Assembly: GCA_977030845.1 (NCBI GenBank)
Contig: OZ365113.1
Location: 31,372,001 to 31,436,000 of the forward strand
DNA: 64,000 nt
Reading direction: 5' to 3'
DNA from: Fimbriosthenelais zetlandica
Lineage: Eukaryota
In this document: positions 3,001 through 51,519 of the stretch, one piece after another
Numbering within the stretch: the stretch's first letter is position 1
Layout: every line of letters begins with the position of its first letter
Notes under the pieces: model-generated
Databases searched by the model: none
What the model was told of the DNA's origin: nothing
What the model saw: only the letters and a program-made list of their open reading frames with translations
Translations under genes and position numbers: made by a program

Positions 3001-6000
3001 CTTCTCCATTCATCTTCTGTATTAGCCTTCGCTAAATTAACACTGCCATATACAATTTAGTTTGTCATCCATTTACAAACTATACATATATTCAGTACAA
3101 TTCCCTATGCATTGGAATCAAATTAAGAAGAAACTAGGTGCCATAAATGCATGCAGTTGCCCTGATTGGGGAAGATTTCACCATGCTCTAGCCCCATCCC
3201 ATTGTATGAACCGGCTCTGTCATATTTACCAATGGAAATGTTTCTAGCCGTGAGATCATTGGAAAACACCTAGTCAGGGCCTTGGCCTTAATAGAAAGCA
3301 TCCACTTGGTGGCCATTTTACCATTGGAGAGCACCAAGAGGCGCAGAGATCTAATATTTAACTAGGAACGCTACGACTCCTTTACGGACTATATTTGGAT
3401 GATCTCAATTGTAGAGCTAAAGCTTTCAAACACGTTCTCATTATTTGCACAACATGTCCATTCACCCTGCACATTTATAGCATCTTGCTTCGACACGCAT
3501 GGTTGGACAAGGATTTTCCTTAAAGACCAGTGCTAAGCATATTCATACAGACCTTCTGCATACCCGAGCTGACTTGCAAAATAATAAATCTTCTGCATAC
3601 GATATGCAAAGCAAATCATGCATTCTAATTAACAGCAAAAAGTCCACCCATTATAAGGGTGCATGTAGTGTACAATGTGGTCTAGAAATCTTTCTTCAGT
3701 GGCTTTCATACATATACAAAATCCATCTATAACTTTATTTGCTCTTAGGACAATACATGCCATATTAATCTGATATGGGGATATTAAGATTCTGCGCAGT
3801 CTGTTATATTAACTTGCAAATGGTGCAGGCGGATGCCAGGCTTCGATTTCTAGAAGGATTAAAATCTGATATGATTTCTTCTCCCGCCATCAGATATATA
3901 TTATTCAGGTTTTAACCTCACATATGGGAAAAGTAAGAGTCTGAAGATATAGTCAGGTATATGACCTGATATTGGGGATGACTCTTAGGAGTCACATACC
4001 GTGTGATGATCCTATTCCAAAATGCTGATTTAGCCCTTTATAATTGAAATGCAGAGCTGACATGCACGACCCTGTGTGTACTTATGCATGTATTCTATTG
4101 TCGGCCAACTCCTTGAGATTCCATCCAAGCAATGGTGTACGGTCCATGCACTTATTTTATCTGACACGGGCTCCCTCCCATTATTGTATGATAAACATTC
4201 TATATGGGGATTACGCCACATACAAGACATCCTCTATATATATGTAATAGTGGTGCCCATAAGCTTGTATGTGATTCGGACCAAGTTGAGAAGTTAAGTG
4301 GGAGGTGAATGGTAATATATTGCATCCAAGTGTGGGAAAATGTAATATAAGGGACGTTCGCCTAAATTGCTTTTGGTAATTACAATGTGTCTTTTCTATG
4401 ACCAAAAAAATACCTAAGGAAGTAAATGACCTGTTTTTGAAATTACTAACAGGAGGTGGTTTCCTTCGCCCACGTTTTGGAAATTAGAACGGTTAACACG
4501 AGGAAAGAGGGCCAGACTTATAATTGCACAATATATATGTGATATATAATATAATGGAGCATACTAATGCATTCATTCACGAAAAAGCCTGGGGCTGTAA
4601 TTATCAAAGTTAGATGAGAGAGCGAGTTTGAATCATCATTTGTTGTTATTACTCAATTGTCCCTACAGACATATGGTATTTATCTCCATTAAAAACAAAT
4701 GTTTCATTATCTCCATTGCCTCAGCGATCATTTATCCTTCAATGATGGCTAAACAATAATGAAGTTCATTTAGCTGGGTACATGTATATACATGATTTGC
4801 TGCCTAGAAAGTTTTAAGTGCAATGGTAACGTATTATACGACCAAGAGTTATGATAATATATACAGTGATGTTTTGTTCAGGTGTGCTTATGGGTGAGGC
4901 TAGACTCGAGTCCCCTCAGAGAAGTAAGACAATACATAATTAGTGTAAAACAATAGGTAATTACTTTCCCCCTGATGGCCAAAACAATGCCTATGGGCCA
5001 ATTAGGATCACGATATTTAATTAGGGCGAGCGCATGATCCAATGCAGTATAGAGAAGGACATGTCACTCAGATGAAGTTTTTACCTGCTTGCTGGAAAGA
5101 ACTGGCAGACTTGTATATATTTTGCTACAGTTCCTGATGGTATATAATAAGATATTATAACCTATTATAAGTATTAAATCCCTCTTTCCCACTTTTGGCC
5201 ATTGAGGAAAATGACACTTGCTAGAAATAAAAAATAAACAGACATTGCTTATTTCCCTATATATATTTGCATTTTATTACAAGAAAAAATCAGTGTCTTG
5301 TTTTGCCACTTATTTTGCCTTCTAATGTGCTCCAGAAAATTACCAGTGACTGCGCCATACTTTAACATCTGGCCATTAAACATGGAATAAGATTACTTAT
5401 CATTTCACTGGCGTCGAGACAAAAAATGTAATGAAATGATTGAAGAGTGTCTTATTGTAACCCGGATTCTATTAACAACCCAGAATAATACCTTCATCCG
5501 ATGGGATTAATTTTTCCCCTCCTGATGATATTGCCAATTTATCCTGTTGTGAAGATGGAAGAGATCCTTAAGAAAGCCAAGTAATGAATTTTAAAGGAGG
5601 AGAAGCGATACTCTGACATTCATTACCACCGGCCCACTCGCACCATGGGCAAATGATCCCTCCCTATTGAAGGCTGGTCGCCCCGAGTTGTATGATAATT
5701 GATATAAACATTAAATACCCGAGGTAATTAAGCTCCCCTAATGGTTCCTTCTCACGCTCCTAACACAATGGAGTCAAAGCGTAACCATATACGTGGATCT
5801 TAGTCGCATTCACACGCTCTTATGGGAACAGGGTGCTTAGAACCAATTAACTCGCCTCGATGACAATCCAAGATGACGATTACCTCGCAGGGATTCGGAA
5901 AAAAATCCATGGGGAATAATAGGGATATGGTGCTGCTAAAACATAGATACAGGGATATCTGGCTGAAGGTGCATATATACAATCATATGCCATGGCATAC

Positions 6001-43700: not shown

Positions 43701-45542
43701 ATCTGAACCGTGTGATGCACCATATCCCTCCATGTGAAAGGTACTGATATCGTGACCCTGGTCACTGTCACCACCTAACCGGTTACATTCGACTTCCTTC
43801 TACTTCCTCCCCAAAATTTATATTTCATTAAAAAATAATTGATATATTAGGTCCAATTTCAGGGTCTATTAATGTTATTGACGGCCCCATATTGGTATGG
43901 GAAAAGGAAAATACTAAATGCTTCTAATTCAATGCACTGTCTCTGGGATGGCATTTGCAATATCATATATACTGGAGACCAGGAAAGTACAGGTTGTTGA
44001 CCTTATGTTGGTTTCCGAACAAGACCGTTTGGGACGCTGGTGTAGGGTTCATTGGAAGATTGACCAGCAGGGCCGTGACATTGACGTGTCATATTAGTAG
44101 CCAGGCTTGACCTGTGTATAGTAATCTGATACTCCCGACCCTCCCTCTCTACCCAAACATGACCTCACTCCTTTTAACTGCCACCACAATTCTGGCAGCA
44201 TTTACAACTTTTCAAATAATATATGTCCCATCCCCCCACGCGCTCTAAATACTATGCCGCATTTAGAAATTGAAATGAAATGCATTAAAAGTAGGACAGT
44301 GAACAATGGCAATTAAATCACATTCCATTATACCCGGGAACATTCGTGACTGGACAGAGTCCAGATTTCTCTGAGAGAATGTCCAGTTTTAATTGAAATG
44401 TTTCGGCGGAATGGAGACAGACTCTCTCTATATATAAATAGCCCATGCGCTCTTTCTTTGGCTCTAAATTCCTGCAGTACTCTCCAGGGCTTGACCTATT
44501 AGAGGGTATGTTCAAACTGACCATATGACCCCCATGGGAGGCTGGAGGAATGGTGGAGGAGTGAGTGGGTGAGTGGGGTTTAGTGGTCTCCACATGTGTG
44601 CTCTATGGGAAACTGGGTCTGTGGGAGAAGAACCTCCCGACCCTCGTACATTACCCTCCTCCACCTCCCTCACTGATGTATCGATGATGTATTGGAATTT
44701 AAAGACGGGCTTTTGTAGAGGCGCGAATGAACAGTTGGTTTTACTTATAGGCGTAAGAGAGTGGCTTCAAAGGGCTGAGGAACGGTGCGCAAAGTGCAGA
44801 ACCATTTGTCATTCTAGTTTTGGGTGTGTGGAAAAAAACTTGTGTTCTATTCTCAACTCATATGTTAAATACAATTAAAGTTCATGAATTAATTAGTAAT
44901 TAATTAAAATCTTAAAATTATATTTTTCTGGGGTTTCTATTAGAGCCACTCATTAAGGCATGAAGGGGTGACTTAGGGGTCGTGCAAAAGGCCAGTACAT
45001 GTGGATGGCGGTTGGTAGAGGCTATAAAATAAATGTAAGTCCAGGTCTCTATGGCTTGTAGCTGAAGTGGTCCGAGAAGTGACCGTTAGCAGCTGGGACT
45101 TGTTTAGTGTGATCTATGTCCAGTGTCCATCACTTAACTGGACATGGTCAGTTGATTGGTAGCACTCATCTAGCCATGTTACCATTGTCCATGCCTTGGC
45201 TTCACCTTTACCCCTATACACGCCCAATATTGAAAATGATCAGCACTGAAGCTTAAAGCTCGAGGTTGAAACTGATTTGCTGATAACTGAATATTTCTCT
45301 GCTCCGCGCTCTAAGAACGGAGCCGGTGTTTCATTAAGTTTGGCAAGTGAGCTCCAAGTGTCATTATTTGCCCCCAGTGTTAACACAAATTTGCTAAAAG
45401 AGACTTGGGCAAGTCAAGGACTAAGTCCAGACGGGTCATAACTGCCGGACCCCAGACACTGAGGGGCAGTAAAATGGTGATGAATGGGACAGAAGACTGC
45501 CGCCCGCTACCTCCGTCTTCCACCCAGGCAAAGTGGGACACG

Positions 45543-45597
45543 AGGGGGGAGAGGGGGCCGGGGGTAGAGGGGGGAGGCCGGGGGAGTGGGGTAAAGG
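45543..45597 (+). other. Dense G-tract cluster, potential G-quadruplex
   Basis: Six runs of four or more G separated by 2-5 nt. Confidence 0.55.
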
Positions 45598-46793
45598 AAT
45601 AGCCGAGGCCATGAGAGGATCGTGGCGGTCATTGTAGGTCAACTAGACGAGGTTTTTACTCTGATCCTAATTCACAGAGGACCGTAAAGACTTTGATTCT
45701 ACTAATGGGCTGGTTAGTCCTGCTCCCGGTTTATACCTTCTCAAATATACCCTGGATGAAGGAATTGGTGAAGTTATTTTGTATAAATAAATATAGTGCA
45801 TTTATTGTCCCATTTGAAAAAAGATTTTTTTTAAATCCTAGATGTAGCCAAAGATTCTGTTATAAGTTCTGTTATATGTCAACTAATTGTGTACTTACAT
45901 GTGTGTTATGTACAATGTAATGGGAAGTAAAATTATGAGTAGAATGAATAGTTACATGCAGTTGGTCCGTGTAATACACAGTAAATAGGATGTCTATGTT
46001 GACGTTGATGTAGATATATACAATGCTGCCCTTCATTATGACTGGCTCACATTAACTAATGCACTTCCTCATCAATGTTGTTTCAAATGGGGAGAGGAAG
46101 ACATCCTCTGGAGGCCAGCACTTCATCATATGATGCCATCATTTAAACATGAGCGTTTTTGTGTTAGTTAGCGGCGCTGCTGATGTGTCCAGGCACTGGA
46201 TGGTCAATCATTTATACATGGGGTACAAAGAGGTCTGATTGTATAACTGACCATTATTAGTTGAAGGTCCAGTGTAGGCCCTCTATAGGGGGCAGGCATT
46301 GTCGGGTGAGACAGGAGGAAACATGGCTTCTTCCTTGTCTCGCTGTGTGAAGGGATTGAGATGAAGGGGGGAGAGAATGGATGAAGTGAAGACAGTTCAT
46401 CCAGGCTTCCACTACACCTGTTGGGATTAAAGATTCATTGGAAGCATTGTGTAGGGTGGTCTCTATATTGAAGGCGGTAACAACACCCCATAGTGCCTGC
46501 CGCTCTCTCCCTCCATCACCAATACACAGCCAACACACACCTACATGCACACACGCAAGAACACATGATTACACACTCATGGTCACACAATTCCTCATGA
46601 GCCTCCATATTATGGTCTACTAATTCAGACAATGAACATAAGGCATACAAGATTATCAAGTGACTTCTTATTCCGAGCCACTTTATGATTATTTAAAATG
46701 GCTAAATTTTAAGAATAAAATTAAATTATCAATACCATGTCCAGATATTACCGGTCATTGTGAGGGTCCGAGTGGAAATTACAAATCTTTTAA

Positions 46794-47345
46794 TTCTGAT
46801 ACCCCCAACCCTACGGGCAGCCGGTTGGCTCTTTCTGGGATGGGACGGAATTAATTCTATCTTGTTATGGGTAGCCTTGTTGGCCGATTGGTAATTGCAA
46901 ATCATTAAGTTCTGATACCCCCAATCCTACGGGCAGCCGGTTGGCTCCTACTGGGATGGAGTGGTTGATGTTAACATCTTTTTACTCCAGGTAGCTTGTT
47001 AGTCGATTGATAGTTATATACTAACCAGTTAATCTTGATACCCCCAACCCCATGGGCAGCCGGTTGGCTCCTACTGGGATGGAGTGGTTGCAGATGGTCC
47101 AACGTCTAATAGGTGTAGCCTGTTGGCTCACATGGATGAATTATTCTTATAATACATACCTATAAAGGCTACCCATACAAAACTAGATACACACATCGAT
47201 TTTGTTACATATCGTCGGTTGATGTATATTACTTGACTTAGATACCCTATCCCAAATCCTATGGGTAGCCGGTTGGCTCCTACTGGGAATGATTGCAGAA
47301 AATCCAACGACTAACAGGAAGTATAGCCTGTTGGCTCACATGGGT
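46794..47345 (+). repeat. Four tandem monomers (core GATACCCCCAAYCCYAYGGGYAGCCGGTTGGCTCCTACTGGGA; spacing 116, 123 and 209 nt), each with one or two AGCC-KGTT-GGCT hairpins
   Basis: AGCCGGTTGGCT at 46819, 46935, 47058 and 47267; AGCCTGTTGGCT at 47117 and 47325; degenerate copies at 46873 and 46993. Confidence 0.9.
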
Positions 47346-47941
47346 GGATGGCATATGGATTCATGGATTTACGTACAATATTAATGGAGCTCTTCATATA
47401 AAAGCAATGGCAAAACCGAACCAGGAGTAACAAGTGTAACGTAAGATTTTAAACATCTCAACTAACTGGCTCCAATTTAAAGACCCAAACAAAAGGAGTA
47501 AGAGTGGACGTCATGACGAGAAGACCTCAAACTGTATGCAAAACTTACATTACTTTCTATTTCTTGATTTATAAGATTTTCACAACACTATCTAGATCTA
47601 TTGACTCATAGAAGTATAGGCACGGGACTTGGTATGTATATATATATATATATACTATTATTATTAACCCGAGTTAAGTTTAAAACACATGCCTATAAAG
47701 GATAACCACAAAAAGAGTAGGTATATACATCGACCTCCAGGATGCTGAATGACTATTTTATAACAATTTATCAACCACTGACTCTAATGCCATATCGTCG
47801 GTTGACGTATAGCATTCAACAAATATGATCACATCTAATATAGACCCGTACAGAATAGACATGATCATTGATCCTTATCATTTTCACTATTATTGAATAA
47901 ACCATCACACTAATGCCGTGTCGTCGGTTGACGCATAGCAT
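47209..47941 (+). repeat. Three dispersed copies of a second hairpin motif, RTRTCGTC-GGTT-GAYGYAT
   Basis: Copies at 47209-47227, 47787-47815 and 47913-47941, read directly. Confidence 0.85.
47637..47665. repeat. (TA)n followed by (TAT)n microsatellite
   Basis: tatatatatatatatatactattattatt. Confidence 0.85.
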
Positions 47942-48222
47942 ATTACCCAGTCATTAATTCACCTGGCTAGTTGTGGGAACTCAATCACCCCTCTCCAGCC
48001 ATAGTGAAGTGGGACCCCACCCCTTAGACAATCCCTGATAACCCTGAGACATGGGGGCAAATCTGAAACTGGTTTCTATGTATTTTCACCAGTTTCAGCC
48101 ACTGCCCTTATATCCAACTTGCCACGAATCACCCATGCACCTTTTGGTCATCACTAGCCATCACTGTTCATACGCATCATCTATATCACCCTCAACCTTA
48201 ATTTACAAACAAGTTTTATACC

Positions 48223-51132
48223 ATGAAACACACATCCATCATGGCCTCTCTAGACATCCTCAATCAGACATATAATGGCAGAGGCGTCCATATTGCCCAT
48301 ATGAATATCCGCAGCTTATTCCCCAAAATAGACTCACTTCGCCAACTTGTTGAGGATAGTAAACTATCCATACTGACAATAAGTGAGACCTGGCTAAATA
48401 GCAATCTAGATAATAAATTAATTTCATTGAAAGATTTTACTCCATATAGGCTTGACAGATCATGGAATGAAGTCAATGCTTCCACTATTAAGAAAGGAGG
48501 TGGCCTCTGTACTTACATTAAAGCTCATTTTGATTCCAATAGTTTTAAATACAAGCATTTAAATAAAAGCTGTCAAGACATAGAAATCCAATGGGTTTCT
48601 TTTGAGCCTAAGCACCAAAAATCAATAATCATAGCGAACATCTACCGGCCTCCCAAAGGCAATATTAATAATTTTAACGAATACCTACATGACTGCTTAT
48701 CAAATGAAATCTGCAAAAATAAACAAATTATAGTACTTGGCGATTTTAACTTAGACTTTCTGTCCCACAGTAACTCGCAGATAAAAGAAACCAAAAATAA
48801 CCTACTGAAATTTGGCTTAAAGCAGCTGATAAAAGAACCTACTAGATACTCTCCAACTAAAAACTCACTACTAGATCCAATTTTTACAAACATTAATGAT
48901 ATATCAAACAGCGGAGTTGTCCACCCAGGACTGAGCGACCATGAACTACCATTTATCACTAAAAAAAAGCATCCCCTAATTAAGAATAATATTACCTTTA
49001 AAGGTAGACCATACAAAAACCTTGATTTAAACCTGCTAAAAAACGAACTTCTAGGGGAAGACTGGACCTTGCTATTTAACTCTAATGACCCTGAAACAAT
49101 CTGGAATATAATTGTTAATAAAATAACAAAAGTACTAGACAAATATTGCCCAATAAAAGAATATAAGATAAGTAAATGTAAAGAAGAATGGATTAGTGCA
49201 GATTTAATAAACGAAATCAACCGTAAAAATAAAGCACTAATAAAAGCTAAACGCACACGCACTACAGAAAATTGGATTATAGCCAGAAACCTCCGAAATA
49301 GCTGCATTAAACATATCCGCCATGCTAGAGCCCACTTCATTAAAGAACAGTTACATATACATAAGAATGATCCAAAGAAATTCTGGGCAAGCATAGCTTC
49401 CCTTATACCAACAAAAAAACAAAAAAGTGCAACGAACAATATAAACCTAATTGACCATACATGCAGCGACAGTCCAATTAGCTCTGATAGAACAGCCACG
49501 TATATTAACAATTTCTTTGCTAACATTGGACCCGAACTGGCCAAATGTTTCAAAGCTACCTGGTCATATTACGGACAAACAAATGATCAAATTCTACCGA
49601 TCTTAGAAACTAATAACACTGAAATAGGCGAATTAATATCTAAAATCGACACTAACAAATCATCTGGTATGGATTACATGTCCTCAAACATTCTGAAACA
49701 GAGCTTCTCTGTCATCATACCACAGCTTACCCATATGTACAACTCATCTTTCACTAAATGTACTTATCCCGATTCTTGGAAATTATCAACCATAGTCCCA
49801 TTACCCAAGGATGGGGATCCAACTGAAGTGTCTAACTACCGTCCAATAGCCCTTCTACCACTACCGGGGAAGATAGCCGAAAAAATAGTTCATAACCGTA
49901 TATATAACTTTTTTGAAAATAATGAAATCCTATCTAAATACCAAGGTGGTTTTAGAAAAAATCATTCAACTGTTAGCACAATAGCTGAACTTACAAATAA
50001 AATTTATATGGGGATGGATAATGGGAAACTTACAATGGCTGTGTTCATTGACTTGAAGAAAGCATTTGACACGGTGGACCATCATATATTATTAGAAAAA
50101 ATGTTCAAACTAGGGATCAGGGGTCCACCATGTCAATGGCTAGCAAGTTATTTGGAAAAGAGGACTCAAAGAACAGTTGCCAATGGCCAACTATCAACCA
50201 TAGCCCAAAGCACCTGCGGAGTGCCTCAAGGAAGCGTCCTAGGTCCACTATTCTTTCTAGCTTTTATTAATGATGCCCCTAACTGCATAACCCCAGCTAA
50301 TACACTTCTCTATGCGGATGACACTGTAATCTATAACCAGGGTGATAACCTGGTGGACATGTCCACCAGAATGCAAAATACATTAACACAATATTCCTCA
50401 TGGTGCACCCAAAACAAATTAACTATCAACACAAAAAAAACTAAGTACATGTTATTTGCCACCAAACAAAAGCTTAAAAACTCCCTTCACCCAACAATCA
50501 CACTGAATGAATCACCTTTAGAGCTAGTTAAATCATACAAATATTTAGGCATGAATCTTGACCCCCAATTATCCTTTACACCCCACCTCAACTCCCTAAT
50601 TCAAAAAGTTAGCCACAAAGCATACCAACTTTCCAAAATTCGCCCATTCATTGATAGCACCACCTCAAGCCTCATCTATAAATCAACCATACTCAGCTAC
50701 TTAGATTATGCTGATATAATTTACCATAAAGGACCTAAATCTCACACCAATAAATTACAGCGCATCCAAAACCATTGCTTAAGAACATGTCACTACCAAT
50801 ACCCTCCCCCATCCACCAACAATTTGCACAATATATACCAAGTTGGCTACCTTGAAGATAGACGGGAATCACATATACTTAACTTCTTTCATAAACAAAA
50901 ACATCTTCATCCAACCACTCAACAAACCTCTACTGTCACTCGCTCACAAGATACCACAACATATTCACTACCCAGACATCACACTGAAAAAGCTAAACAA
51001 AACCTAATGTACCACGGGAAAAAACTCTGGAATGAACAATCAGCAGAAATCCGAAATATAGAACAATATTCATGCTTTAAAGCTCAATCCAAAAGAAAAA
51101 TGTTAAATAAAATCCCACAACATAGAGGATAA
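48223..51132 (+). CDS. LINE ORF2-type protein (969 aa): apurinic-like endonuclease plus reverse transcriptase
   Basis: APE motifs: HMNIRSL, ISETWL, YRLDR..KKGGG, NIYRPP, LGDFN, QLIKEPTR, SDH. RT motifs: NYRPIALLP, QGGFRKNHST, VFIDLKKAFDTVDH, GVPQGSVLGP, YADDT, KYLG. The C-terminal LDYADIIY..LQRIQN is typical of CR1/L2-group elements. Confidence 0.96.
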   Translation: MKHTSIMASLDILNQTYNGRGVHIAHMNIRSLFPKIDSLRQLVEDSKLSILTISETWLNSNLDNKLISLKDFTPYRLDRSWNEVNASTIKKGGGLCTYIKAHFDSNSFKYKHLNKSCQDIEIQWVSFEPKHQKSIIIANIYRPPKGNINNFNEYLHDCLSNEICKNKQIIVLGDFNLDFLSHSNSQIKETKNNLLKFGLKQLIKEPTRYSPTKNSLLDPIFTNINDISNSGVVHPGLSDHELPFITKKKHPLIKNNITFKGRPYKNLDLNLLKNELLGEDWTLLFNSNDPETIWNIIVNKITKVLDKYCPIKEYKISKCKEEWISADLINEINRKNKALIKAKRTRTTENWIIARNLRNSCIKHIRHARAHFIKEQLHIHKNDPKKFWASIASLIPTKKQKSATNNINLIDHTCSDSPISSDRTATYINNFFANIGPELAKCFKATWSYYGQTNDQILPILETNNTEIGELISKIDTNKSSGMDYMSSNILKQSFSVIIPQLTHMYNSSFTKCTYPDSWKLSTIVPLPKDGDPTEVSNYRPIALLPLPGKIAEKIVHNRIYNFFENNEILSKYQGGFRKNHSTVSTIAELTNKIYMGMDNGKLTMAVFIDLKKAFDTVDHHILLEKMFKLGIRGPPCQWLASYLEKRTQRTVANGQLSTIAQSTCGVPQGSVLGPLFFLAFINDAPNCITPANTLLYADDTVIYNQGDNLVDMSTRMQNTLTQYSSWCTQNKLTINTKKTKYMLFATKQKLKNSLHPTITLNESPLELVKSYKYLGMNLDPQLSFTPHLNSLIQKVSHKAYQLSKIRPFIDSTTSSLIYKSTILSYLDYADIIYHKGPKSHTNKLQRIQNHCLRTCHYQYPPPSTNNLHNIYQVGYLEDRRESHILNFFHKQKHLHPTTQQTSTVTRSQDTTTYSLPRHHTEKAKQNLMYHGKKLWNEQSAEIRNIEQYSCFKAQSKRKMLNKIPQHRG

Positions 51133-51440
51133 ATCATATCCTTTTCCCCCCTTTTCTTGTTAATTTATACGAACTGCCTTCGAAACTGTTATTGTCATTT
51201 TTTCATTTACCATCAGACTCATCCCATATCATTTCAACCATACCAACCATTGTATATGTTTGAATGAAAGAAAACAATGTACTACTTTAAATCACTCACT
51301 CTTTTCTATGTTTCCCAACTGTTCTCTCCAATTCTAACCGCTAACACTCTTATTTCCTTCTCATTTTCTACCTCTATGTCTTTTCCACTTTATAATGATT
51401 CAAATGATAAAATGCCTGTGTGATTTTTTTTTTTCTCTAA

Positions 51441-51490
51441 GCTGTAGCGATGAAAACCTACTATTATTGTAGAGAACTGCAGCCTAATCC

Positions 51491-51519
<29 letters not shown>
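51441..51519 (+). terminator. LINE 3' terminal stem-loop, AATAAA and poly(A) tail
   Basis: GCTGTAG (51441-47) pairs with CTGCAGC (51477-83) and encloses CTAC-TATTATT-GTAG. AATAAA is at 51492-97 and A25 at 51495-51519. Confidence 0.75.

What the first reader, a model, noticed from the sequence alone, without database searches (positions are those of the whole stretch)
46815..47941. Array of bulged GGUU/UGUU-tetraloop hairpins with covariation in place of LINE ORF1
Seen: nine intact hairpins (46819, 46935, 47058, 47117, 47213, 47267, 47325, 47796, 47922) and two decayed ones. All share one geometry: 3-bp lower stem, single 5' pyrimidine bulge, 4-bp upper stem, GGTT loop (7 copies) or TGTT loop (2 copies). 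Two unrelated upper stems are used (AGCC/GGCT and CGTC/GAYG). The lower stem varies while pairing is kept: GGG/CCT, GTG/CAC, ATA/TAT and GTG/CAT, the last a compensatory A-T to G-C swap; only 47325 has a mismatch. Several pairs are G-U, which would be A-C on the other strand, favouring an RNA fold on the LINE sense strand. Inference: a multivalent protein-binding array, MS2-operator-like in layout, for RNP assembly, localisation or translational control in an element lacking ORF1. I do not recognise it as a described motif.
Basis: partly seen in the sequence, partly recalled or inferred. Interest (0 to 1): 0.8.

Follow-up and report, generated by a model that had tools for sequence, protein, structure and literature searches.

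The report
Repeated bulged hairpins upstream of LINE
Just upstream of an intact jumping-gene (LINE) enzyme gene that lacks its usual companion genes lies a short, decayed tandem repeat whose best-kept parts are small hairpins of one shape and one loop. The pattern is real and looks constrained, but no second copy could be found, so it is not shown that the repeat belongs to the LINE or does anything.

Summary
Nine 19-nt hairpins of identical geometry (3 bp, a 5' pyrimidine bulge, 4 bp, a GGTT or TGTT loop) sit at the stated places, all on the + strand and nowhere else in the window.

They are not nine independent events. They belong to three repeat classes:
- A1, four copies, and A2, two copies plus two decayed. 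Both lie in 116-135-bp tandem monomers and are homologous to each other.
- B, three copies, with no sequence similarity to A.

New here: A1 and two B copies share a longer ~32-nt architecture, with an outer 5-bp helix and an internal loop, on unrelated stem sequences. In the monomers the hairpin is far better conserved than the rest (17/19 against 28/99 invariant columns).

The strand and RNA argument is weak. G.U against A.C is about 5:3, and the minus strand folds about as well. The A2 hairpins compete with a more stable alternative fold.

The downstream ORF is an intact APE+RT LINE ORF2 with a poly(A) tail. All seven relatives examined carry ORF1-NADAR upstream. This copy has none.

Whether the array lies inside the LINE is unresolved. 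I found no TSD, no other copy, no reads and no orthologous empty site. Base composition hints at a boundary near 46500.

Best reading, at about 40%: a monomer-type LINE 5' leader whose conserved core is a protein-binding hairpin.

The parts
46500..46767 (+). G-poor, A/C-rich stretch with LINE-body-like composition immediately upstream of the array. It is the candidate 5' boundary of the inserted unit.
   Evidence: G fraction is 0.127 here, against 0.24-0.27 in the flanks and 0.11-0.16 in the LINE body. Markov log-odds switch from -9 to -19 to +6.5 at 46500. This is suggestive only, because the flank and LINE distributions overlap.
46768..47137 (+). Three head-to-tail A monomers: M1 46768-46883, M2 46884-47006, M3 47007-47137. 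They are about 78% identical to each other.
   Evidence: Direct-repeat families D1, D2 and D4, self-BLAST and the monomer alignment.
47138..47232 (+). Unit C/B inserted between M3 and M4. It is repeated at 47671-47815 and carries B hairpin 47209-47227. It also holds an inverted copy of part of M1.
   Evidence: Families D5 and D3 and inverted repeat I1. BLAST hits 47147-47199 with 47680-47733, and 47208-47228 with 47791-47811.
47233..47350 (+). A monomer M4, carrying both an A1 and an A2 hairpin.
46809..46840 (+). A1 extended hairpin, copy 1 (core 46815-46833). The other copies are at 46925-46956, 47048-47079 and 47257-47288.
Evidence: One search gives the core. One search shows 26/32 invariant columns here against 19/86 elsewhere.
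47113..47131 (+). A2 hairpin with a TGTT loop. The second copy is at 47321-47339 and has one A.C mismatch. Decayed homologues lie at 46869-46888 and 46989-47007.
   Evidence: A2 is homologous to A1 (0/500 shuffles). In local folding the more stable alternative, CUAAYAGG pairing with CCUGUUGG, wins.
47786..47816 (+). B extended hairpin (core 47792-47810). The second full copy is at 47912-47942 (core 47918-47936). A third copy at 47209-47227 has the core only.
Evidence: B has no significant sequence similarity to A.
47351..48222 (+). Non-tandem 'tether' between the array and the ORF2 ATG. It contains two B hairpins and 40 upstream ATGs counted from 46500.
48063..48098 (+). Perfect 11-bp inverted repeat with a 14-nt loop, ending about 125 nt upstream of the ORF2 ATG.
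   Evidence: Read from the sequence. Local fold is -15.6 kcal/mol. The only Rfam match is a sub-threshold chance hit.
48223..51132 (+). Intact 969-aa LINE ORF2, with an apurinic-type endonuclease domain and a reverse transcriptase domain.
   Evidence: ORF list. Pfam RVT_1 at 2.4e-39, plus Exo_endo_phos_2 and Exo_endo_phos. Human L1 ORF2p structures match at E of about 1e-19 to 1e-20. The best database relatives are only 40-44% identical.
51133..51519 (+). 3' UTR (51133-51490) and a poly(A) tail of about 29 A (51491-51519). There is no GGTT-type hairpin here.

Best explanation
The region 46768-47941 is a degenerate tandem-repeat leader. It has four A monomers of 116-135 bp plus three copies of a second unit.

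The conserved cores of the repeats are imperfect hairpins of about 32 nt, all of one architecture:
- an outer 5-bp helix;
- a small internal loop with a 5' C;
- a 3-bp helix;
- a single bulged pyrimidine;
- a 4-bp helix closed by C-G;
- a GGUU tetraloop.

I read the region as the 5' part of the same roughly 5-kb inserted unit as the intact ORF2, about 46500-51519. On that reading it is a monomer-plus-tether leader, like the mouse or rat L1 5' UTR in layout, in a LINE copy that has lost the ORF1-NADAR and second-ORF module of its clade.

The hairpins would be repeated docking sites on the sense RNA for one structure- and loop-specific protein, either ORF2p or a host RNA-binding protein.

**Shown:** the hairpins, their repeat-class structure, their preferential conservation, the shared architecture on unrelated stems, the intact ORF2, and the absence of ORF1.

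**Inferred:** that the array is inside the LINE, that it is transcribed on the + strand, that the fold forms in RNA, and that a protein binds it.
For: - Geometry and exclusivity. The covariance model finds only the nine hairpins, and the next best hit scores 10 bits.
- The same structure is recovered de novo by RNAalifold, with 4 of 7 pairs doubly changed.
- The architecture extends to about 12 bp in A1 (4 copies) and B (2 copies) on unrelated stem sequences.
- The background rate of that architecture with any loop is about 8-14 per 64-kb strand. With a KGTT loop, my arithmetic gives roughly 0.002-0.005 expected in this 1.5 kb.
- The hairpin is the conserved island of the monomers: 17/19 against 28/99 invariant columns, Fisher 7e-7. 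It is also the conserved island of the B copies.
- Variable positions inside A1 fall in unpaired positions (3), are G-C to G.U changes (2), or sit at the helix end (1).
- A1 folds well as RNA (-16 to -21.5 kcal/mol). As DNA it folds no better than shuffles (-6 kcal/mol, z +0.4), because it leans on G.U pairs.
- LINE-like composition begins at about 46500, upstream of the array.
- B hairpins occur both inside the array (47209) and 300-430 nt from the ORF2 ATG. This ties the array to the ORF2-proximal region.
- A missing TSD is not informative. Two 99.8%-identical 6.05-kb relatives also show none.
- Precedents from the literature: monomer-plus-tether L1 5' UTRs (PMC5381506); an ORF1-less active LINE, ZfL2-2 (PMC2666801); LINE ORF2p binding a small stem-loop generically by its stem and specifically by its loop (PMC4176376).
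Against: - There is only one copy, so no population of elements exists on which to test covariation or co-occurrence.
- No TSD or empty site defines the boundaries.
- All seven relatives examined have ORF1-NADAR, and none has this motif. A 5'-truncated ORF2 lying next to unrelated DNA is therefore a live alternative.
- The putative 1.7-kb leader holds 40 ATGs, against 27 expected. That is hostile to scanning.
- Two A2 copies have decayed, and the two intact ones are out-competed by another fold.
- Individual hairpins have modest z-scores, -1 to -2.2.
- The minus strand folds about as well, and B 47792 folds better on the minus strand.
- The G.U to A.C tally is about 5:3.
- The significance estimates are post hoc.
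Confidence: 0.4

Rival explanations
1. The array is not part of the LINE. A 5'-truncated copy, cut within the 450-820-nt spacer that relatives have upstream of ORF2, landed next to a pre-existing local tandem repeat or another non-autonomous element. That element's units are imperfect palindromes, as in dyad-symmetric satellite or TE-internal repeats. Any hairpin function would then belong to that other element.
For: - Every relative examined has ORF1-NADAR, often with a second ORF of about 215 aa, and a non-coding spacer before ORF2.
- No ORF1 trace is found here.
- Monomers are only about 78% identical to each other, while ORF2 and the A-tail look young.
- The array itself has flank-like composition.
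- No motif occurs in the ORF or the 3' UTR.
- No TSD encloses the array.
Against: - LINE-like composition resumes upstream of the array at 46500-46767.
- B units link the array to the last 300-430 nt before the ATG. The junction would therefore have to fall in 47942-48222.
- The array does not continue beyond the poly(A) tail.
- Neither the array nor the flanks recur elsewhere in the 64 kb.
Confidence: 0.33
2. A DNA-level reading. The monomers are promoter or enhancer repeats of the LINE, and what is conserved is a protein-binding DNA site at the apex, CNGTTG. The flanking complementarity was produced and kept by a mutational process, namely replication template switching in quasi-palindromes, not by selection on an RNA fold.
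For: - Only the apex C-KGTT-G, plus one G-C pair, is invariant across all nine.
- Conservation in the A monomers extends beyond the 19-nt hairpin.
- Both strands fold about equally.
- Mouse and rat L1 monomers are promoters (PMC5381506).
- Template switching can create and maintain hairpins, including apparent compensatory changes (PMC8794818 / 10.1101/2021.04.15.439925).
Against: - Two sequence-unrelated arm sets keep the same bulge and internal-loop positions over about 12 bp. An apex-only DNA site does not need this, and template switching tends to make perfect palindromes rather than bulged ones.
- The A1 hairpin is poor as DNA.
- The CNGTTG match to any transcription-factor consensus is my recollection only and is not specific.
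Confidence: 0.2
3. Chance. These are short hairpins picked out by eye in a repeat, with no meaning beyond tandem duplication.
For: - Only three repeat classes exist.
- Hairpin z-scores are modest.
Against: - The expected number of hairpins of this geometry with a KGTT loop is about 0.05 per 1.5 kb for the core. For the extended form it is about 0.002-0.005.
- The hairpin is preferentially conserved.
- B copies share little beyond the hairpin.
Confidence: 0.03

Closest known systems
Mouse and rat L1 5' UTR: a tandem monomer array joined to the coding region by a non-repeated tether (PMC5381506)
   Same: Head-to-tail monomers lie upstream of the LINE coding region, followed by a non-tandem stretch. 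All are in the sense orientation.
   Different: - Monomers here are 116-135 bp, only about 78% alike, and few in number.
- They precede ORF2 directly, with no ORF1.
- Their conserved core is a bulged hairpin, not a CpG-rich promoter block.
- Promoter activity and membership in the element are untested.
3'-tail stem-loop of stringent-type L2-clade LINEs (UnaL2, ZfL2-1, ZfL2-2), bound by the ORF2p linker region (PMC4176376)
   Same: A small stem-loop in a LINE in which the stem may vary and the loop is specific. That matches the pattern here: variable stems and a constant GGUU loop.
   Different: - Those are single hairpins in the 3' tail that start reverse transcription.
- Here there are 6-9 hairpins on the 5' side.
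- This element ends in poly(A), and no such hairpin is in its 3' UTR.
ZfL2-2, a retrotransposition-competent LINE without ORF1p (PMC2666801)
   Same: A LINE with ORF2 only.
   Different: - It belongs to a different clade.
- I know of no repeated 5' hairpins described for it.
- The nearest relatives of the present ORF2 do have ORF1.
MS2 and PP7 coat-protein operator hairpins and the iron-responsive element. This comparison of layout rests on my own knowledge, not on a test.
   Same: A single 5' bulged nucleotide sits a fixed distance below a small loop of defined sequence. Recognition is by shape plus a few bases.
   Different: - The bulge here is a pyrimidine 4 bp below a tetraloop.
- MS2 and PP7 use a bulged A with different spacing and loops.
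- The IRE has a C bulge 5 bp below a CAGUGN hexaloop.
- No Rfam family matches.

Membership tests
L1-type monomeric 5' UTR | Tandem head-to-tail monomers upstream of the coding region, followed by a non-repeated tether | tested here: met
   Four A monomers lie at 46768-47350, then 872 nt of non-tandem sequence run to the ATG.
L1-type monomeric 5' UTR | Monomers lie inside the element and are shared by other copies of the family, usually in variable number | tested here: inconclusive
   - No TSD was found.
- There is no other copy in the window.
- No copy was found in public data.
- Composition hints at a boundary near 46500.
L1-type monomeric 5' UTR | Monomers carry promoter activity | not testable with these tools
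   This needs reporter assays or CAGE. No sequencing run was listed.
Stringent-type LINE 3'-tail stem-loop | The stem-loop is located in the 3' tail next to the terminal repeats | tested here: not met
   All hairpins are 280-1400 nt upstream of ORF2. The covariance model finds none in the ORF, the 3' UTR or elsewhere. The element ends in A29.
Stringent-type LINE 3'-tail stem-loop | Stem sequence is free and loop sequence is fixed | tested here: met
   The loop plus its closing pair, C-KGUU-G, is invariant. The stems are AGCC/GGCT or CGTC/GAYG, and the lower and outer helices are unrelated.
Stringent-type LINE 3'-tail stem-loop | The stem-loop is bound by the cognate ORF2p | not testable with these tools
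   This needs a binding assay.
Any curated RNA family (Rfam 15, including hammerhead, HDV-like, IRE, SRP, tRNA-like) | A score at or above the family's gathering threshold | tested here: not met
   No hit overlaps the hairpins even at E up to 10. ARAGORN finds no tRNA.
ORF1-NADAR LINE clade (the relatives of this ORF2) | ORF1 with a coiled coil and a NADAR domain, often followed by a second ORF of about 215 aa, upstream of ORF2 | tested here: not met
   - It is present in all seven relatives examined.
- tblastn of those ORFs against the window finds nothing.
- There is no + strand ORF above 74 aa in 46500-48222.
ORF1-NADAR LINE clade (the relatives of this ORF2) | An APE+RT ORF2 of about 950-970 aa, a 3' UTR of about 350 nt, and a poly(A) tail | tested here: met
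   The relatives L010 and L011 are shown.

The most novel reading that the evidence does not exclude
A LINE lineage has dispensed with its RNA-coating ORF1-NADAR protein. In its place it carries, in its 5' leader, an array of at least six structurally identical bulged C-GGUU-G hairpins. These act as multivalent docking sites for ORF2p or a host RNA-binding protein. The array would be an RNA-encoded substitute for ORF1p in ribonucleoprotein assembly, cis-preference or ORF2 translation.
Probability: 0.12. Interest if true: 0.75.

Novelty: new variant of a known kind. Interest (0 to 1): 0.4.

Why it matters
If the array proves to be part of an active ORF1-less LINE, it would be a compact natural example of a retrotransposon using repeated RNA hairpins where its relatives use a protein. 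It would also offer a testable handle on how ORF2-only LINEs assemble on, or translate from, their own RNA. The hairpin would be a new small protein-binding RNA module with a bulged pyrimidine and a GGUU tetraloop. If the array is merely an adjacent repeat, the finding reduces to a palindromic minisatellite next to a truncated LINE, which is ordinary.

Tried and rejected
**Searches for other copies: none found**
- Exact monomer-core pattern in metagenome contigs and viral contigs: 0 matches.
- ORF2 against metagenome contigs: only 28-34% identical relatives.
- Protein searches with the whole ORF2 and with its N-terminal 250 aa: best hit 44-48% identical.
- Sequencing runs for the array and for ORF2: none was listed. 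Read laying was therefore never usable.
- Self-BLAST of the array, the LINE and the flanks within the window: nothing.
- Notes of this scan, by words and by sequence: nothing on this motif.

**Orthologous empty site: blank**
- Flank ORFs were searched in both protein libraries without result.

**TSD search**
- Exact and mismatch-tolerant searches gave only chance-level matches, at 45184 and 46211.

**Known-family readings rejected**
- Hammerhead, retrozyme, HDV-like, IRE, SRP/Alu-like, tRNA or SINE: rejected by Rfam and ARAGORN.
- Covariance-model hits in relative L013 turned out to be T-arms of tRNA-derived SINE-like repeats, not this motif.

**Homology and strand**
- Homology of B to A: rejected as unproven, because alignment scores are no better than shuffles.
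- A strand call from G.U pairs: rejected as underpowered, at about 5:3.

**Technical**
- A partition-function fold of 1.5 kb timed out. It was replaced by local folds.

Full report
**1. Observation**

- AGCCKGTTGGCT occurs six times and TCGTCGGTTGAYG three times. All are on the + strand between 46819 and 47933, and none occurs elsewhere in 64 kb.
- A scan for the stated geometry finds eight fully paired instances (G.U allowed) plus 47321 with one A.C. The geometry is 3 bp, one 5' bulged base, 4 bp, a 4-nt loop.
- The remaining ~125 kb of strand holds four unrelated KGTT hairpins of this geometry.
- RNAalifold predicts the same structure without being told it.
- 98.4% of cells pair, against 33-54% for slid partners. 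Four of seven pairs show double changes.
- A covariance model built from the nine finds only those nine. The next best score in the window is 10 bits, and nothing lies in the LINE ORF or 3' UTR.

**2. Not nine independent events**

Repeat analysis resolves the region as follows.
- Three head-to-tail A monomers lie at 46768-47137.
- A 95-nt C/B unit lies at 47138-47232.
- A fourth A monomer lies at 47233-47350.
- A non-tandem stretch follows, in which the C/B unit recurs at 47671-47815 and its hairpin part again at 47892-47941.

Each A monomer carries an A1 hairpin (GGTT loop; four intact) and an A2 hairpin (TGTT loop). A2 is intact in M3 and M4 and decayed in M1 and M2. A1 and A2 are homologous (0/500 shuffles reach their alignment score). 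B is not detectably similar to A beyond the apex. So there are three lineages, and the A/B differences cannot be counted as substitutions in a common ancestor.

**3.

- In local folds, A1 (four copies) and B (two copies) extend to about 32 nt. The layers are an outer 5-bp helix, a 1x1 or 1x2 internal loop with a 5' C, the 3-bp helix, the bulged pyrimidine, the 4-bp helix and GGUU. The outer helices are UCCUA/UGGGA in A1 and AAUGC/GCAUU in B.
- That architecture with any loop occurs about 8-14 times per 64-kb strand. With the same loop, the expectation in this 1.5 kb is about 0.002-0.005. This estimate is my arithmetic and is post hoc.
- Within the monomers, 17 of 19 hairpin columns are invariant, against 28 of 99 elsewhere (Fisher 7e-7). 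For the extended form the figures are 26/32 against 19/86.
- The six variable columns inside A1 split as three unpaired, two G-C to G.U changes, and one at the end of the helix.
- The B copies share little besides the hairpin.

This supports constraint on a structure. A bare DNA word would not explain it.

**4. Weak points**

- The A2 hairpins lose to a more stable alternative pairing, and half of them have decayed.
- B 47209 lacks the outer helix, and a bulge-free register is slightly more stable for two B copies.
- Single-hairpin z-scores are -1 to -2.2.
- The minus strand folds about as well, and for B 47792 it folds better.
- One point favours RNA: A1 is stable as RNA but no better than shuffles as DNA.
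- As far as I recall, C-GGUU-G is not among the specially stable tetraloops. This is my own knowledge and was not tested.

**5. The LINE**

- ORF 48223-51132 encodes 969 aa with endonuclease and RT domains and a distant match to human L1 ORF2p.
- It is followed by a 358-nt 3' UTR and A29.
- The closest database proteins are 40-44% identical.
- Seven relatives' loci all carry, upstream of ORF2, an ORF1 with a coiled coil and a NADAR domain. Most also have a second ORF of about 215 aa. A non-coding spacer of 450-820 nt follows.
- Two 99.8%-identical copies define a 6.05-kb element with a ~140-nt 5' UTR, a poly(A) tail and no obvious TSD.
- Notes of this scan say that NADAR-ORF1 LINEs are common in this genome too.
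- The window copy has none of this. tblastn finds nothing and there is no sizeable ORF.
- None of the relatives has the GGTT motif. One relative, L002, has its own small hairpin repeated twice in its spacer. That is an anecdotal parallel.

**6. Is the array part of the LINE?**

This is unresolved.

For:
- A G-poor, A/C-rich composition like the LINE body starts at about 46500, upstream of the array.
- B units occur both within the array and 300-430 nt from the ATG.

Against:
- The array itself is flank-like in composition.
- The monomers are only about 78% alike.
- The 1.7-kb leader has 40 ATGs.
- Random 5' truncation within the clade's spacer would also give an intact ORF2 without ORF1.

I found no TSD, though relatives lack one too. 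No other copy, reads or orthologous site could be obtained.

**7. Verdict**

The feature is real and non-random, and it appears to be under structural constraint. It matches no curated RNA family. I found no description of such a 5' hairpin array in the literature searches.

| Reading | Weight |
|---|---|
| Monomer-type LINE leader whose core is a protein-binding RNA hairpin | ~0.4 |
| Unrelated palindromic repeat beside a truncated LINE | ~0.33 |
| DNA-level promoter repeats with mutationally maintained palindromes (PMC8794818) | ~0.2 |
| Chance | ~0.03 |

Precedents for the parts of the preferred reading exist:
- monomeric L1 5' UTRs (PMC5381506);
- the ORF1-less ZfL2-2 (PMC2666801);
- ORF2p recognition of a small stem-loop by its loop (PMC4176376).

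The step that would decide between these readings is a search of this species' own assembly.

Noticed in passing
window 48063-48098: A perfect 11-bp inverted repeat (CTGAAACTGGT ... ACCAGTTTCAG) with a 14-nt loop, ending about 125 nt upstream of the ORF2 start. It is the most stable local hairpin in the ORF2-proximal region, at -15.6 kcal/mol.
   Followed up: partly
window 46856-46878 with 47165-47187, and 46997-47011 with 47302-47316: Segments of the A monomers recur in inverted orientation within the array (83-87% complementary, about 290 nt apart). The global fold therefore pairs monomers with each other. These could be rearrangement scars or long-range pairing.
   Followed up: no
L001, L002, L003, L010, L011, L012, L013 (ENA ERZ25767047) and the P0018 locus (ERZ26222911): The relatives of this ORF2 have a three-ORF layout: ORF1 with a coiled coil and a NADAR domain, a conserved ORF of about 212-217 aa with no Pfam match, then ORF2. 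In L001-L003 the gene caller also lists a 55-73-aa ORF ending 8 nt inside ORF2.
   Followed up: partly
L002 3106-3129, 3593-3616 and (inverted) 3767-3782: A relative LINE carries a 24-nt hairpin-forming island (stem UGUC/GACA, loop YGGY) twice in the spacer upstream of ORF2, with dissimilar flanks. Its core occurs once more in inverted orientation.
   Followed up: partly
L013 8440-8530, 8850-9040 and 9480-10293: tRNA-derived SINE-like units, partly in a 152-nt tandem array, lie downstream of a relative LINE. They gave the only sub-threshold covariance-model hits, through their T-arms.
   Followed up: yes
window 48642-49553 (- strand): A 303-codon open frame with a TTG start runs antisense to the LINE ORF2. 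It is probably a composition artefact and was not examined.
   Followed up: no
window 45520-45600: A G-rich tract (runs of G5-G6; TRF period 8) lies about 1 kb upstream of the array, in a GC-rich block.
   Followed up: no
window 47671-47941: The CpG observed/expected ratio is about 1.06 in the stretch holding the two full B hairpins, against 0.2-0.7 in the surrounding segments.
   Followed up: no
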